This document shows, one piece after another, positions 43,359 to 49,000 of a stretch of DNA of 64,000 nt. The first letter of the stretch is position 1; each line of letters begins with the position of its first letter. This DNA is from Pocillopora damicornis (taxonomy: Eukaryota): NCBI RefSeq assembly GCF_003704095.1, contig NW_020845410.1:992001-1056000 (forward strand), in the 5' to 3' direction. Under the pieces are notes generated by a model that saw only the letters and a program-made list of their open reading frames with translations, had not been told where the DNA came from and searched no databases. The translations under genes were made by a program, and so were the position numbers.

Positions 43359-46070
43359 GTTGATCTTGAAGAACAGGGATTCAAAAATTACAACCGTTCG
43401 ATTCCGTTCGTAACTACCGTACAACACCGTAGAATCCAACAGCGCGTTATATTCCCTTGATGTCTCACAACATATCTTCTTCTAATATGAAAAGAGAAAC
43501 AGAGCAATTCTCTGTTTATTAATTTGTGATCAACGAAACACCCGCCAATGTACCCCCTTCTTTCTTTGTTAGTTATGTATGCGATCTCTCATCGCGAAGT
43601 GATGTAGTGAAGCGGAAAAAATATTTAACAGACAGACCTGTGATTGGTCCATTGTTCAAGATTTTTCACCTGTAACAGATGATGAGCGCGATAATCAGCT
43701 TGCTAGGGAAATATCGAAGTGTTTTGATCGCAGTAAAATATCACAATTATGGTTTCTTCGTTGGAATTTGAAATCAAAACTCTTTAAAAAAGAAATTATT
43801 GAAATTGTTTGGGTTTCTGACCCTCCTAGATACGACGCATAGCAAACCAGTGACAAATAGTATTTTTCTTAGGCGTTGATTCCATTGTGTCTCAAACAAC
43901 ATTGATTCTCTCATTGTTCCAACCATTTTCGGCTTTTCAAATAGTTTTAAATTTATTCGTGATTTTAAATTCGGCTTCCTGATAGATATTCTTCGAAGAA
44001 AAATTTTTGATAAAATGAAACTGTTTGAACTGATGTATTCCCGTCGCTGCTAACAAAAATCCCTCTCTTTCATCCATATTTTGACATCCCAAAAGATGAA
44101 ATAGTTTGAGCACTCAAAACCCATATCATAAGCCTTTTTGTTTTATTCAATACCACTTGAACTATTTAAAGCATATAACTCCTTGTCAAGCATTTTGTAC
44201 TATTCTATCGGTGGAATTTGTCTGTTTATAAAAACCATTTTTCCATAGCGCGAATTTAAACTTTGATTAACACGAAATTAGCTTCCGATATTTTCATTGA
44301 ATCCCTTCTAGCGTCAGTTAAACGTGTTTTCTGATCCCTGCGTGGTAGATCTCCATAGTTTCCTCAATACGTCGTCAGACGCCCACACACTCAGGATGTT
44401 AGGAAATCAGAGAATGAGAAAACGCTTGAATTTGAGGGGAATGTGAAGCAAAATGAAGATTGCTTTACCGAAAAAGGGCTCCATCATAACAAATACGTAC
44501 ATTTACGCCGGGAAAGGAAACCCCACGCGAACACGATAGTAAGATTTGGACCCTCATCAACGAAAGGGAACAAAATACTCGACAGAACCTAAAATATATA
44601 CTTCAAATTTATTTAAAGAGGTTGCTGGTTAACGTCTGTTTATTCATATCATAAGCGCGAGACAAAATTCTAACAACAGAGGCTAGTTTAATATCACTGC
44701 TGGAAAGCGTCTTCACGCAGGCAAGGTTGTTGTGATGAATTCGAACTGAATACGTAAATTACACTTATTATATTGCGCAAATGGCTTTCCAAGCGTAATT
44801 TTTCGTTCTTTTTCTAAGCTTGAAAACACCTTCCTGGAAAGTCACACTGCACTATGATAGGAGCGGTGATTTTGGGAATTAACTGATCGACAATGAGGCA
44901 TCATTTTTTTCTTTCTCCAGAACGAGGTATACATTATGACTACACGAAACTTGCTTGAAAAAATATTTAATGGATTCCAAATATCAAAAGTCATCATCAA
45001 TATTATTTTTATTCTGTTAGGTGGACGTGTTGAACTGAATTTCTCTTGGAGTCACCAGAAATATATTAAAAGCATTCATTTGAAAATACATGATTTCCGA
45101 GACGGAATGTCTCATGAGGGGCCTTGCTCCACTCTAAATCACACCCCAAGTAAAACAAACGCGAAAATATGGAGAGTTATTTTTCCATCAAGATCTGTCA
45201 CTAGGTAGTTCATGGTTATTCCACTTTCATCCTAGCTGCCTGCAATCAAATATTGAAAAATTATACAAAAATTTAAAAAAGTTAGTGCTCTCTGTACCAT
45301 GACCATGACATTGTTTCAGCAGTCTTGATAAAAAAAAAAAGGTACAGCATGCACACTTTAGAGATAACATGAGGTGGAAAAAGAGAACGTTACTAGTTAT
45401 TGAATATAAAACATTCCGTACAGTTCTTGAAGCTTGGAATGCAAAACGTTCTGCACACAACCTAAAACCTTCTGTGCCTCACCTGAAACGTCTTTTATGT
45501 TATTTTTGAAATTCTCTTAAAATTTTATAGGAGAACTTAAGAGGAAAAGACAGTGACTAGGGGTTTTGTAAAGGTCAAGATCGTTCTTTGAAATTTATGC
45601 GCGTTTGTGCGCCAATAATTAAAATGTCCCATACACTCCCTCACACAAATAAAAAAGTTGGCATATGACATCACTCAGAATAGGGGAAGTTTTTGAAAAA
45701 AATACACTTTTATCCCTCAGAGAATTACCCTTGAAAAGCATTATTCTTAACCATTCAAGTTAAATGTTGAAGGAACGTCTCATTAAGGTTAAAGAATTTG
45801 GAGTAGACCCAAAAGAGGGCTGTAGTTTATGACAGTGTTTTACGAGGTCATAACCAGAGCAGAAGTCTTCACCAGAGTGACCCAACTTTTGCTCAGTTTA
45901 TCAAATTCAAGACTACCCTCATTCAGACACATCCCAACTTTGGAACAGAATGCTCAAATTCACCAAGATTAAGATCTTACATTAAGTATCCTGAATGTGA
46001 TTTTTTTTTCTCGCAACTCGTGATAAACAATCTCACTCTAGGGAACCACTTACCTGTACTTTTGCCAGTT

Positions 46071-49000
46071 TCACTTCATGGCCAATATCAATCGTTTGTT
46101 TGGTAGTAGCTTATCAGAATCTGCCGGGAAATCAAGGTTGCTTGGATCCAAAAGCTTACACAAATCCCTGGGACTGCTGGCTCCTTTAACTTGTTTTGGA
46201 TCATACCAATACATTATGTAAAAATTACACATTTCATCGCTATGGGTTAATCTGGTAACAGAGATAGAGATTTGAATCTCTTAATTAGTCTGATGGCATA
46301 AATAACAACAAAGTGAAACGCTCGATACGTACGTGTCAGAAATTCTCTTTGGTGGCCAATACACATTATCAATTCAGTTAATAAAAACCAAAATTATTTT
46401 GTAATACCCTACTGATGCAACACCACAGTTTCTTCAGAAATTTAATAATTCTCCTTTTATTCAGAGGAACACTACCGGTGGCCTGGTAAGATAATGGCTA
46501 CATTGATATATAACAAGCATACCCTGAGTGTGTTACTCTGTTTCTCTGCATGGAATTGAAAGTGCAACGGGCAGCCTGTAAGTTAAGAGTATTTAATGCT
46601 TTAAACAAAGCGAAACAACAAATTTAGTCTGTGATACAGGAGGCAAAAGCAAAAAATTCTTTGTTTGAAAGTGTGAAATGGGGGAGATGCATTGGACAAA
46701 GGAAGAAATGAGTAAAATTGAGAAGAAAATTAAAAACAAGAGTGTAAATATGCTTGCTGGGAAAGAACAGGGGAGATGACACTAAGGAGATTTGGAAAGC
46801 TAGTCAGTAAACATGAAAGTTGAGAAGGGTTGTGCTGGTCAGGTGAGGAGATGGAAAAAACAAGGCAGGAGACTGAAAACATTGGGAAGGGTGAGATTTT
46901 TTTATTGCAATAAGAAGACCACAGCTTACTATAGAGTCTCCACTTTTAATTTCCAATAGATTATCTACTGGGTAGAATGCCTGAAAAAACAAATGAGATT
47001 ACACTGAAATAAACCAATTTTTCACCCCTTTAATTCTGTTTTCTGTGTACAAGAATTTTAGAGGGGTCCCTTGATAGTGGATAAGCACTTACTCATCATG
47101 CAGTGACAAATATCTTACAGGTGATGGGTAATTTTAATGAACTTTTAATTTCCATATTTACTTTATTGAGAAAAATTATCACATTGCCAACTCCAGAATT
47201 AGGTAAGATGCTTGTTACATGTGAACCTAAAATGAAAGGAACTCCAATAATTTAAAATTTTTTTGTCTGTAACTTTCATCTATCTCCTTCTCTCCCCCAT
47301 TGGGGGGAGGGGGGGGGAAGAGAGAGGGGGAGGACTTCCAAATAACCTATTAGAGCTTATCTGTGGCTCAGTAGCAAAGCATAATGGACCATGTGATCTG
47401 AAGGTGTGGAATTTGAATCAATTCTATATGCAGAATTTGGATGACCTGTTTGTCCTACATAATTATAACTTTCTATAACATGAAGAAAGGGACAAAATGT
47501 CGCCCATTGTGTATGACACTGGCTGATTTTCAGTTTACAGAAAAAACATCCAATTACTGATAAATCTGTCTTTTTTCTGGATGACAGTGAGAGTTATGTA
47601 GCTGCTGAAGCATATTTAACTTACCTGTGGTCGTTGTGGATCCATTTTTCCTATTTGAGTCCATTTTTCATCACGTATTCTGTAGCCAACCACTACCGTC
47701 CCTAGAGCAATTCCAGAATTGAACTCAACTGAGTGTGCAAACATGAGATCCAAACTTTATGCATTAAATCTTTTTAAACTTGAAAATTTGCTTTGAACCA
47801 GTTGGTTTCCTTTTTATGCAAACACAAGTTTAAAAATTATGAGGTTACCACACCAGTAAGTGGATTTAGGACCAAATGCAAGTATAAATATTGTTAACTC
47901 TGAAAACCCAAGTTCAAAGACTGGACCAAACATAGAAAACGTCACCAAAATATTTTTTAGAGACCAGAAAAGTGATTGATGAGAAACGGAAATCTTTATC
48001 AGCCACAAATTACAATGATTGAAAAAGTCCTTATGAAGGTCTCCATTTTTACAAATCTCCCTCAAGTGATTTTTGGAATGCTGAATTTGCCATGCAAACT
48101 TGTTCTATAAATTTTATCATTAATAATCAGTCATATGCCAATTCTTGATAAAAACATCTCTAGTAATTACTGCAACATATTTAAAAGTCATGCACCATTA
48201 TTTTCAAAAAGACTTCATATCACAAAAGGTATATAGAAGAAGGAGTCTCTTAGAAAGGAGTTCATTCTTTTTAACCCTCTGTTAGCACTATTAACCCTTC
48301 ACACACTAATTTATCAGTATTCTCTGTACCATTCTCTATACATTTCCTAAGGTGCTGACAACAATAATTTCTTAACAACCAAAAGCTTTGGTAGTTGGTG
48401 ATCACTTCCTTGATTCTCATGACCTTACTGTGTGATTCAGGGTGATATTGTAAAGAGAACTGAGATGCTAGTCTTACTTAGGGGTCATAGAGAAACAAAT
48501 AAAAAACCCTAACCTAAGATGAAAAAAATGACTGAAAACTGATTATAGTCTAAATGTGATCAGTTCAGTGGAACTCACCAATGCCATGAGTGTGGACTCT
48601 AAATTTAAAAGGATGTAAGACTGGTCCATCATTGTATCGACACCCAATGTCAAAATGCCAAGCTGGATAAAGAAGAAACACAGTATAAAGTTATAAGACA
48701 GTTAGGGGCCAGAGTGATGTCAACGATATTATTTTACCTTCCTTCTTTGGTGGAATGTCTCCAAATGGTTGTAGGACAAATATGGCAGCCAGTTGACTTG
48801 GTCTTTGAAGGGAAAATGAGAAATAGAAATGTTAAAACTGAAACGTTGGGAACAGTAGTGTAACGAATCATTCTACCCCCTCATTCATTTTCAACTAATG
48901 AGGGTTTAAATTTTACTTGATTATTAATATTCAGATCCTGCAGGAAGAGAATTAACTTAAAAACTGAAAACAGAATAAAAGAGCCAAGTCCTGACCCATG

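What the first reader, a model, noticed from the sequence alone, without database searches (positions are those of the whole stretch)
46054..46140. Monofunctional PHM created by a stop codon placed exactly on the PHM/PAL dibasic cleavage site
Seen: the last PHM exons of the two paralogs align without gaps: [25 protein letters not shown] versus PHM LDFPADSDKLLPNKRLILAMK*. At DNA level ATG AAA AGA AAC corresponds to ATG AAG TGA AAC, so the Arg codon of the KR pair matches the stop through one substitution. Both genes have an AG|GT donor exactly 17 nt further on (34709 and 46054), and in the PHM gene it is a perfect CAG|GTAAGT now lying in the 3' UTR. Known: bifunctional PAM is cut at paired basic residues in the linker to free soluble PHM. 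Inference: a tandem duplicate of PAM hard-wired the proteolytic product by nonsense mutation and lost the PAL exons. The relic intron lies less than 50 nt from the stop, so the mRNA should escape NMD. This looks like a visible gene-fission event in the neuropeptide amidation pathway.
Basis: partly seen in the sequence, partly recalled or inferred. Interest (0 to 1): 0.78.

Follow-up and report, generated by a model that had tools for sequence, protein, structure and literature searches.

The report
Coral PHM-only gene split from PAM
A stony-coral gene for the first half of the peptide-amidating enzyme is a real, expressed tandem copy of the two-part gene next to it. It most likely copied a short splice form that already existed, so the stop codon on the cleavage-site arginine only trimmed its tail: a neat but fairly ordinary case of gene birth.

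Summary
On the minus strand a 13-exon gene (53071-44521) encodes a 367-aa PHM-only protein. It lies directly upstream of a 20-exon bifunctional PAM gene (43604-30237). Its TGA (46073-46071) is positionally homologous to the Arg codon of KMEMKR, a motif conserved in all anthozoan PAMs. The TGA is not an error: RNA contigs and a RefSeq protein have it, and orthologues have TAA at the same codon.

A tree, an AU test and synteny show the gene is a pocilloporid-lineage tandem duplicate of PAM, not an ancient monofunctional PHM.

The mechanism needs revision in three places.
- The "relic" donor at 46054 is actively spliced, across an 814-nt 3'UTR intron.
- The exon it joins matches an alternative terminal exon inside PAM intron 12. 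That exon is conserved across Scleractinia. In Stylophora and other corals it yields a PHM-only isoform ending ...[13 protein letters not shown].
- So the duplicate most likely copied this short transcription unit. PAL exons need never have been present, and the stop only removed about nine residues.

PAM's real donor is 34713, not 34709. That KR is a cleavage site remains an inference.

Monofunctional cnidarian PHMs are long known and this gene is already annotated. Interest is moderate.

The parts
52634..53071 (-). PHM-only gene, exon 1. The 5'UTR reaches at least 53071. The ATG is at 52831-52829. The exon encodes the signal-peptide-like N-terminus.
   Evidence: Transcript L018 aligns over 53071-52633. 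Exon model.
46523..51801 (-). PHM-only gene, coding exons 2-11: 51801-51747, 51488-51386, 50513-50416, 50104-50021, 49693-49639, 48802-48738, 48662-48579, 47701-47625, 46980-46930 and 46575-46523.
   Evidence: All junctions are GT-AG. L018 is spliced in the same way. RNA joints support exons 9-12. Exon sizes equal PAM's except exon 5.
46054..46251 (-). PHM-only gene, exon 12. It holds the last coding part (...DSDKLLPNKRLILAMK), the stop and 17 nt of 3'UTR, and ends at the donor CAG|GTAAGT.
46071..46073 (-). Stop codon TGA, positionally homologous to the Arg codon (AGA) of KMEMKR in PAM.
   Evidence: Orthologues have TAA at the same codon.
45240..46053 (-). Spliced 3'UTR intron of 814 nt, GT..AG.
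   Evidence: RNA contigs of X15 (depth 88) and X17 (depth 45) join 46054 to 45239, while unspliced contigs have depth 5-15. L018 carries the same junction.
44521..45239 (-). PHM-only gene, exon 13, entirely 3'UTR. Contigs end at 44683, 44623 and 44521. AATAAA stands at 45013, 44644 and 44613. Its start is homologous to the PAM alternative terminal exon.
30237..43604 (-). Bifunctional PAM gene with 20 coding exons. The ATG is at 43358, the 5'UTR reaches at least 43604, PAL is encoded by exons 13-20, and the stop ends at 30237.
   Evidence: RefSeq isoform X1 (P0253, 703 aa) maps exactly. RNA contigs lie over 43161-43604.
34713..34909 (-). PAM exon 12. It ends ...[14 protein letters not shown], with Lys AAA at 34731-34729 and Arg AGA at 34728-34726. 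The working donor is A34713|GTAGGT. The AG|GT at 34709 is out of frame with PAL.
34140..34254 (-). Alternative terminal exon inside PAM intron 12. A pyrimidine tract and CAG acceptor precede GCCAGCTTTGATGAAAGTG... It gives the in-frame tail Ser-Gln-Leu-stop, and AATAAA stands at 34169-34164. The 3' end given here is approximate.
   Evidence: Homologues lie in the Desmophyllum and Porites PAM introns. Proteins ending NLGESQL exist in Stylophora isoform X3 and in Logan transcripts. Its use in Pocillopora RNA was not tested.
32869..33058 (-). PAM exon 13, encoding the linker and the start of PAL ([12 protein letters not shown]...).
56596..57540 (-). Intronless RRM plus cyclophilin-type gene of 315 aa, used as the upstream synteny anchor.
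   Evidence: It is 87-89% identical to a gene about 6 kb upstream of PAM in Desmophyllum and Porites.

Best explanation
The window (Pocillopora damicornis) holds two same-strand neighbours. The upstream gene makes a secreted 367-aa monofunctional PHM. The downstream gene makes bifunctional PAM (PHM plus PAL).

Scleractinian PAM genes carry an alternative terminal exon with its own poly(A) signal inside intron 12. Splicing exon 12 to it gives a PHM-only isoform that ends a few residues after the conserved KMEMKR (for example ...[13 protein letters not shown]).

In the pocilloporid lineage a tandem duplication copied the 5' part of PAM, from the promoter through this alternative exon. It placed the copy between the upstream RRM-cyclophilin gene and PAM. 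The copy was therefore PHM-only from birth.

Later one substitution (AGA to TGA) put a stop on the Arg of KMEMKR. This removed about nine C-terminal residues and turned the old terminal exon into pure 3'UTR. It left a spliced intron 17 nt after the stop, too close to trigger EJC-type NMD by the mammalian rule.

The copy then evolved fast but under purifying selection, and it keeps all copper ligands.

Shown: the gene structures, the splicing, exon homology, phylogenetic nesting, synteny and selection. Inferred: a partial rather than a full duplication, the order of events, KR as a convertase site, and NMD escape.
For: Gene models and RNA:
- Twelve colinear PHM exons have equal sizes in both genes, except exon 5 (84 vs 72 nt) and exon 12 (198 vs 197 nt).
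- RNA contigs from two studies and the Logan transcript L018 splice 46054 to 45239.
- The orthologue transcript L019 is also spliced onto a homologue of exon 13.

Origin from PAM:
- In the IQ-TREE tree the PHM-only clade (100/100) is sister to Pocillopora plus Stylophora PAM (93/85). It sits inside robust-coral PAMs (98/92) and scleractinian PAMs (100/99).
- The AU test rejects one clade of all hexacoral PHM-only genes (p 2e-7).
- The genome holds only these two loci.
- In Desmophyllum and Porites the RRM-cyclophilin gene lies about 6 kb upstream of PAM, with no PHM-like hit between.

Alternative exon:
- The terminal exon of the coral transcripts L020/L021 matches window PAM intron 12 (44 nt, 82%, E 1.8e-8). 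The matched element has a pyrimidine tract, a CAG acceptor, an in-frame stop and AATAAA.
- The same exon lies in intron 12 of Desmophyllum PAM (148 nt, E 1.9e-21) and of Porites PAM (E 1.5e-5). It is the only conserved island of these introns.
- Stylophora PAM isoform X3 and the Logan proteins P0243, P0244 and P0246 end in ...GESQL (NLGESQL or NFGESQL), as predicted.
- Its acceptor region aligns exactly on the RNA-verified acceptor of PHM-only exon 13. Shuffles reached the score in 0/500, 0/500 and 4/500 trials.
- Read through, the PHM-only frame (N W Q K Y R Q L G stop) reaches the same TGA.
- No PAL-like remnant lies in 43359-46070.
- Only about 0.9 kb separates the longest PHM-only transcript end (44521) from the PAM 5'UTR (43604).

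Function:
- The protein matches rat PHMcc at E 8.6e-72, and the HH, H, HxH and M ligand motifs are kept.
- dN/dS is 0.35 between PHM-only orthologues, against 0.14 for the PHM part of PAM.
Against: - Use of the 34254 exon in Pocillopora's own RNA was not shown.
- A full duplication followed by deletion of the PAL exons gives the same present-day structure and cannot be excluded.
- The AU test does not reject a placement of the PHM-only clade outside crown scleractinian PAMs (p 0.24). The long stem (0.61) makes the exact node unsure, so dating rests mainly on synteny and on the absence of orthologues in the searches.
- L020/L021 could come from a young PHM-only duplicate rather than from an isoform. 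However, Stylophora isoform X3 and the intronic position of the exon in three PAM genes argue for an isoform.
- Nothing here tests cleavage at KR, and EJC-dependent NMD rules are not established for corals.
Confidence: 0.65

Rival explanations
1. A full-length tandem duplicate of PAM became monofunctional through the AGA-to-TGA mutation on the KR site. The PAL exons then decayed or were deleted, leaving the old PHM/PAL intron donor behind.
For: The stop is positionally homologous to the Arg and one substitution away. The donor lies at the homologous exon end. The gene is nested in bifunctional PAMs.
Against: The exon joined by this donor is homologous to PAM's alternative terminal exon, not to a PAL exon. 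That exon already gives PHM-only isoforms in relatives. No PAL remnant was found. The PAM 5'UTR starts within about 1 kb after exon 13. An extra deletion with well-placed breakpoints would be needed.
Confidence: 0.2
2. The two genes are one transcription unit. The stop is bypassed with the GT at 46074-46073, and the transcript runs into PAM exon 1, giving a PHM-PHM-PAL protein of 1088 aa, as in the GenBank models RMX45322.1 and CAH3138914.1.
For: Two deposited gene models are built that way. Multi-PHM PAMs exist in other animals (P0018 and P0022; Lymnaea, as cited in PMC6669573).
Against: No RNA joint leaves 46075 in four runs. Contigs end in exon 13 near poly(A) signals, and PAM has its own 5'UTR contigs. 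RefSeq and 66 clustered proteins give a 367-aa product. The odd joints of X17 are cross-mapped PAM contigs on conserved paralogous stretches.
Confidence: 0.03
3. The gene belongs to an ancient monofunctional PHM family shared with sea anemones. The stop would then be ancestral and the resemblance to the neighbouring PAM secondary.
For: Monofunctional PHM genes exist in Calliactis and Nematostella.
Against: The AU test rejects a common clade (p 2e-7). Anemone PHM-only genes are sister to PAMs of their own lineage. Synteny shows an insertion in pocilloporids. Exon 13 is homologous to the PAM intron 12 exon.
Confidence: 0.02
4. The TGA is a sequencing error, a rare allele or a selenocysteine codon.
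For: None found.
Against: It is identical in an RNA contig, in the transcript L018, and in P. damicornis and P. verrucosa RefSeq proteins of 367 aa. Two orthologues have TAA at the same codon, which excludes selenocysteine.
Confidence: 0.01

Closest known systems
Monofunctional PHM of sea anemones (Calliactis parasitica O44398: Hauser et al. 1997 and Williamson et al. 2000, as cited in PMC9545775; also the Nematostella PHM-only gene)
   Same: A secreted PHM without PAL in an anthozoan. It ends within a few residues of the KMEMKR motif, in a species that also has a bifunctional PAM.
   Different: It arose independently. The anemone genes are sister to anemone PAMs, and a shared clade is rejected. 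They keep the KR and stop 2-10 residues later, whereas the pocilloporid stop replaces the Arg.
PHM-only splice forms of the PAM gene (Stylophora PAM isoform X3, XP_022792848.1; by my recollection, rat PAM-4 with its own 3' exon)
   Same: Exon 12 is spliced to a short terminal exon, giving a soluble PHM. The 3'UTR exon of the PHM-only gene is homologous to that exon.
   Different: Here the short form has its own gene and promoter. Its stop has moved upstream into exon 12, so the terminal exon no longer codes.
Separate PHM and PAL genes beside PAM in bilaterians (scorpions, PMC6669573; planarians, PMC5461114; insects)
   Same: Paralogous monofunctional genes coexist with, or replace, bifunctional PAM.
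   Different: Those are old, dispersed paralogues (the bilaterian PHM clade). This one is young, lineage-specific, still in tandem, and still shows the structural trace of its origin.
Division of splice isoforms between gene duplicates (function-sharing or subfunctionalisation model; from my own knowledge)
   Same: One duplicate corresponds to one isoform of the parent gene.
   Different: The parent PAM has not lost the short isoform, at least in Stylophora. The division of labour is therefore incomplete or lies in expression.

Membership tests
Peptidylglycine alpha-hydroxylating monooxygenase (PHM, EC 1.14.17.3) | Two copper type II ascorbate-dependent monooxygenase domains (PF01082 plus PF03712) | tested here: met
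   Both families are precomputed for P0035 and P0248. The protein matches rat PHM catalytic core at E 8.6e-72 over residues 51-328.
Peptidylglycine alpha-hydroxylating monooxygenase (PHM, EC 1.14.17.3) | Copper ligands: HH and H for CuH, HxH and M for CuM (rat H107, H108, H172, H242, H244, M314; numbering from my own knowledge) | tested here: met
   The aligned motifs tahHHlmvfgc, evHy, rvHtHgig and deMcnfy are all kept.
Peptidylglycine alpha-hydroxylating monooxygenase (PHM, EC 1.14.17.3) | Hydroxylating activity on glycine-extended peptides | not testable with these tools
   This needs an enzyme assay. A dN/dS of 0.35 between orthologues points to a working protein.
Monofunctional (PAL-less) PHM gene | The transcript ends without PAL (NHL) exons | tested here: met
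   The stop is in exon 12. Spliced transcripts end in exon 13. No PAL-like hit lies in 43359-46070. The RefSeq product is 367 aa.
Bifunctional PAM (the downstream gene) | PHM and PAL domains in one reading frame | tested here: met
   The 703-aa isoform X1 maps exactly on 20 exons. PAL exons align to Oculina PAM.
   The alignment is ungapped and anchored by DSD plus 13 residues in all orthologues, with TGA against AGA.
   KMEMKR is conserved in all anthozoan PAMs seen, which fits a function. No proteomic data were available.
   No PAL remnant was found. The exon after the stop is the homologue of PAM's alternative terminal exon, which already ends the protein. Absence of remnants is weak evidence on its own.
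Partial duplicate that fixes a splice isoform as a gene | The parent gene has the alternative terminal exon, and it is used | tested here: met
   The exon lies in intron 12 of Pocillopora, Desmophyllum and Porites PAM. It is used in L020/L021, in Stylophora isoform X3 and in Logan proteins. Its use in Pocillopora itself was not tested.
Partial duplicate that fixes a splice isoform as a gene | The duplicate's last exon is homologous to that exon, and the copy is inserted next to the parent | tested here: met
   The alignment falls on the RNA-verified acceptor, and shuffles reached the score in 0 to 4 of 500 trials. Synteny shows an insertion between the RRM-cyclophilin gene and PAM.

The most novel reading that the evidence does not exclude
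Across Cnidaria, PHM-only genes were born repeatedly and independently from the short-isoform transcription unit of PAM. Candidate cases are the pocilloporids, Nematostella, the Calliactis lineage, and octocoral, scyphozoan and hydrozoan examples. Each ends within about ten codons of the conserved KMEMKR. That motif would then be a C-terminal processing signal of soluble PHM rather than merely a PHM/PAL separator, and the pocilloporid stop hard-wires the processed end.
Probability: 0.3. Interest if true: 0.55.

Novelty: new member of a known kind. Interest (0 to 1): 0.4.

Why it matters
Peptide amidation is the step that activates most cnidarian neuropeptides. Knowing that pocilloporid corals carry a dedicated, fast-evolving PHM gene beside PAM matters for annotation. 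Two deposited gene models wrongly fuse the two genes into a 1088-aa protein.

It also matters for single-cell and functional work on coral peptidergic cells. The locus is a clean, datable example of how a splice isoform can become a gene of its own. The parent exon, the copied exon, the moved stop codon and the resulting 3'UTR intron are all still visible.

It does not change what is known about the pathway. Monofunctional PHM in cnidarians has been known since 1997, and bifunctional PAM is accepted as ancestral.

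Tried and rejected
- **PAL relics.** tblastx of 43359-46070 against the PAL part of PAM gave nothing below E 0.08.
- **Alternative donor at 46075 that would bypass the stop.** No RNA joint uses it.
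- **Pfam scan of the genome.** It did not flag the window's own exons. The hits on other contigs are more distant copper monooxygenases, and only the window matches P0035.
- **Exon-level search of solved structures.** It gave only weak hits, E about 0.1.
- **Large representative search with the 59-aa last exon.** It returned mostly exon-sized ORF fragments, but it gave P0001 and P0009 as entry points.
- **Genomic loci of Stylophora (P0040) and Oculina (P0025).** Not on record.
- **Acropora P0028.** It gave only a transcript.
- **Metagenome scan for the end of PAM exon 12.** 0 hits.
- **Promoter homology.** blastn of the PAM upstream region against the PHM-only upstream region gave no hit.
- **Attenborough et al. 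2012.** The paper is not held, so what it says about cnidarian monofunctional PHMs could not be checked.
- **Odd joints of run X17 (47687 to 43161, 46235 to 47624).** I read these as PAM contigs cross-mapped on conserved paralogous stretches at the 90% threshold, not as splicing.
- **First exon-model script.** It failed and was replaced.
- **Joined spliced models.** Searches used exon references or database ids. Joined models were built from window.fa only inside scripts, for alignment, tree and dN/dS.

Full report
**Observation.** Both genes lie on the minus strand. The upstream gene ends ...TTG GCC ATG AAG TGA AAC TGG CAA AAG TAC AG|GTAAGT, with the TGA at 46073-46071 and the last exon base at 46054. 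The downstream gene reads ...ATG GAG ATG AAA AGA AAC CTT GGC GAA AGT AG|GT, with the AGA at 34728-34726. tblastx shows colinear paralogous exons in 52831-46068 and 43358-34723, 45-70% identical per exon. The last exon aligns to rat PAM residues 309-356, the end of the PHM catalytic core. The window has two N runs (60693-60811, 62313-62412). They are far from the locus and were left alone.

**Gene models.** Using database proteins, I mapped 12 coding exons for the PHM gene, all GT-AG, giving 367 aa. The model equals RefSeq XP_027044886.1 of Pocillopora damicornis at 367 of 367 residues. The 703-aa RefSeq PAM isoform X1 maps exactly on 20 exons from 43358 to 30237. Exon sizes are identical in the two genes except exon 5 (84 vs 72 nt) and exon 12 (198 vs 197 nt). 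PAM exon 12 ends at 34713 (A|GTAGGT), 13 nt after the Arg codon. Desmophyllum and Porites PAM have the same GTAGG donor. Joined exon models were built only inside scripts from window.fa.

**Is the stop real, and is it old?** Twenty public runs from eight studies hold the stretch or part of it, 16 of them at least half of it.
- An RNA contig of X15 covers 46053-46251 without a difference.
- The Logan transcript L018 reads ATG AAA TGA.
- A cluster of 66 proteins, including P. damicornis and P. verrucosa RefSeq entries, has 367-aa members.
- Two orthologues, about 73-80% identical in protein, have TAA at the same codon: the genomic scaffold L017 and the transcript L019.
- Stylophora P0040 ends ...TKRAKLAMK.

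In all of these, DSD is followed by exactly 13 residues and then the stop. In all scleractinian PAMs, DSD is followed by 13 residues and then the Arg of KMEMKR. The stop is therefore positionally homologous to that Arg. It predates the split of these pocilloporid lineages, and it is not selenocysteine. KMEMKR is conserved in every anthozoan PAM retrieved, hexacoral and octocoral. This fits a convertase site but was not tested. Hitting the Arg is about a 1-in-6 event among the codons of this stretch that are one step from a stop (my count). The exactness is suggestive, not significant.

**The "relic" donor is in use.** RNA contigs join 46054 to 45239 and skip 814 nt. The ends read CT..AC on the plus strand, which is GT..AG for the gene. 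This is seen in X15 (depth 88) and X17 (depth 45), while contigs inside the intron have depth 5-15. L018 has the same junction, and L019 is spliced onto a homologue of the same downstream exon. Exon 13 runs from 45239 to 44683, 44623 or 44521, near AATAAA signals, and is wholly 3'UTR. The stop lies 17 nt before the last junction. By the mammalian 50-55-nt rule this should not trigger NMD, and the abundance of the spliced form is consistent with that. No joint leaves the alternative GT at 46074. That is the GT used by two deposited 1088-aa fusion models.

**Origin from PAM.** The word search with P0035 found close relatives only in pocilloporids: P0034, Stylophora P0036 and P0040, and the fragment P0001. 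The next best hits were PAM PHM domains of robust corals. An IQ-TREE analysis (LG+C20, 37 PHM domains) gave these results:
- The PHM-only clade (100/100, stem 0.61) is sister to Pocillopora plus Stylophora PAM (93/85).
- It sits inside robust-coral PAMs (98/92) and scleractinian PAMs (100/99).
- Anemone, octocoral, scyphozoan and hydrozoan PHM-only sequences each sit with PAMs of their own lineage.

The AU test rejects one clade of all hexacoral PHM-only genes (p 2e-7). It does not reject a placement just outside crown scleractinian PAMs (p 0.24).

Synteny settles more. The intronless RRM-cyclophilin gene at 57540-56596 has 87-89% identical orthologues about 6 kb upstream of PAM in Desmophyllum and Porites, with no PHM-like hit between. 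In Pocillopora the PHM-only gene fills that gap. The genome has only these two loci for this protein.

**What the 3'UTR exon is.** Two transcripts from another coral (L020, L021; protein P0031) end ...KMEMKRNFEDG|QLR stop, with the junction G|GCCAGCTCAGATGAAAGTG. The evidence on this terminal exon is as follows.
- It matches window PAM intron 12 (44 nt, 82%, E 1.8e-8). There a long pyrimidine tract and CAG precede GCCAGCTTTGATGAAAGTG at 34254. The in-frame tail is Ser-Gln-Leu-stop, and AATAAA stands at 34169.
- The same exon lies in intron 12 of Desmophyllum PAM (148 nt, E 1.9e-21) and of Porites PAM (E 1.5e-5).
- It is the only alignable island of these introns.
- Stylophora PAM isoform X3 (377 aa) and the Logan protein P0246 end ...[13 protein letters not shown], exactly as predicted; P0243 and P0244 end ...KMEMKRNFGESQL.
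- PHM-only exon 13 begins TTTGATTGCAG|GCAGCTAGGATGAAAGTG. Local alignment of the Desmophyllum, Pocillopora-PAM and Porites acceptor regions against the 2449 nt downstream of the PHM-only donor picks exactly this RNA-verified acceptor. Dinucleotide shuffles reached the score in 0/500, 0/500 and 4/500 trials.
- Read through the TGA, the frame (N W Q K Y R Q L G stop) ends at the same TGA as the short isoform.

**Reading.** The simplest history is a tandem duplication of the 5' part of PAM, from the promoter through the alternative terminal exon. That segment is the transcription unit of an existing PHM-only isoform. Several facts fit a copy that never held PAL exons:
- No PAL remnant was found.
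- About 0.9 kb lies between the longest transcript end and the PAM 5'UTR.
- The exon homology described above.

The AGA-to-TGA change then shortened the tail by about nine residues and made exon 13 non-coding. A full duplication followed by a deletion gives the same picture and keeps about a fifth of the probability.

**Function.** The protein matches rat PHM catalytic core at E 8.6e-72 and keeps all ligand motifs. dN/dS is 0.35 between Pocillopora and another pocilloporid (dS 0.34). For the PHM part of PAM against another coral it is 0.14, though dS there is saturated. The copy is constrained, but it evolves two to three times faster, after a stem about nine times longer than PAM's.

**Comparison with what is known.** Monofunctional PHM from sea anemones was cloned in 1997 and its gene described in 2000 (cited in PMC9545775). 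Bifunctional PAM in non-bilaterians was reported in 2012; that paper is not held. Separate PHM and PAL genes beside PAM are described for scorpions and planarians. This gene is already annotated as a 367-aa protein. New here are three things: the lineage-specific origin, the homology of its 3'UTR exon with a conserved alternative terminal exon of PAM, and the secondary nature of the stop.

**Verdict.** The finding is a new member of a known kind, of moderate interest.

Noticed in passing
window 39019-38952 and 37359-37295 (minus strand): The PAM gene has two mutually exclusive versions of exon 7: [22 protein letters not shown] and [21 protein letters not shown]. Both are used in RefSeq isoforms of Pocillopora and Stylophora, while other corals show only the second type. 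The PHM-only gene has a single exon 7 that looks like a blend of the two (LAAIFVL...IPPKKE).
   Followed up: partly
window 46075/46074 to about 43486: Two deposited gene models (RMX45322.1 from P. damicornis, CAH3138914.1 from P. meandrina; 1088 aa) fuse the PHM-only gene to PAM. They splice at the GT that overlaps the stop codon into the PAM 5'UTR. No RNA joint supports this, so they look like annotation errors.
   Followed up: partly
window 46097-46092 (minus strand): All PHM-only orthologues have gained a dibasic pair (NKR or TKR) seven residues before the C-terminus, where PAM has GSG. It could be a new processing site.
   Followed up: no
L025:18583-18660 (Nematostella PHM-only gene): This independently derived PHM-only gene stops at TAA two codons after KMEMKR, and a GTAAAA follows 9 nt later. 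No PAL exon lies within 9 kb downstream. It may be a parallel case of a stop just before an old donor.
   Followed up: partly
G000:C1363:185947-186108: A second PAL-like exon, 54% identical to a PAM PAL exon, lies elsewhere in the genome. It could belong to a PAL-only gene or a second PAM-like gene.
   Followed up: no
G000 contigs C3332, C2329, C469, C781 (loci L001-L016): There are several clusters of copper type II monooxygenase exons with stronger Pfam scores than the window's own exons. They probably belong to DBH/MOXD-like genes, and some appear to be in tandem.
   Followed up: no
window 60263-60480, 48317-48471, 39945-40081, 32621-32893: A repeat family of about 150-200 nt is scattered in introns and flanks of both genes, on both strands.
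   Followed up: no
window 46070-45227; L019:1316-1351: The distance from the new stop to the old stop of the terminal exon is a multiple of three in both lineages (27 nt in Pocillopora, 36 nt in L019), despite different indels. However, L018 has a further in-frame TAA. This is probably chance.
   Followed up: no
window 56596-57540 and 10000-13100; L026, L027: The gene order EST1/SMG6-like, RRM-cyclophilin, PAM, PRDM is conserved between Pocillopora and Porites. Its upstream part (EST1/SMG6-like, RRM-cyclophilin, PAM) is also seen in Desmophyllum, where the locus fetched does not reach a PRDM gene.
   Followed up: partly
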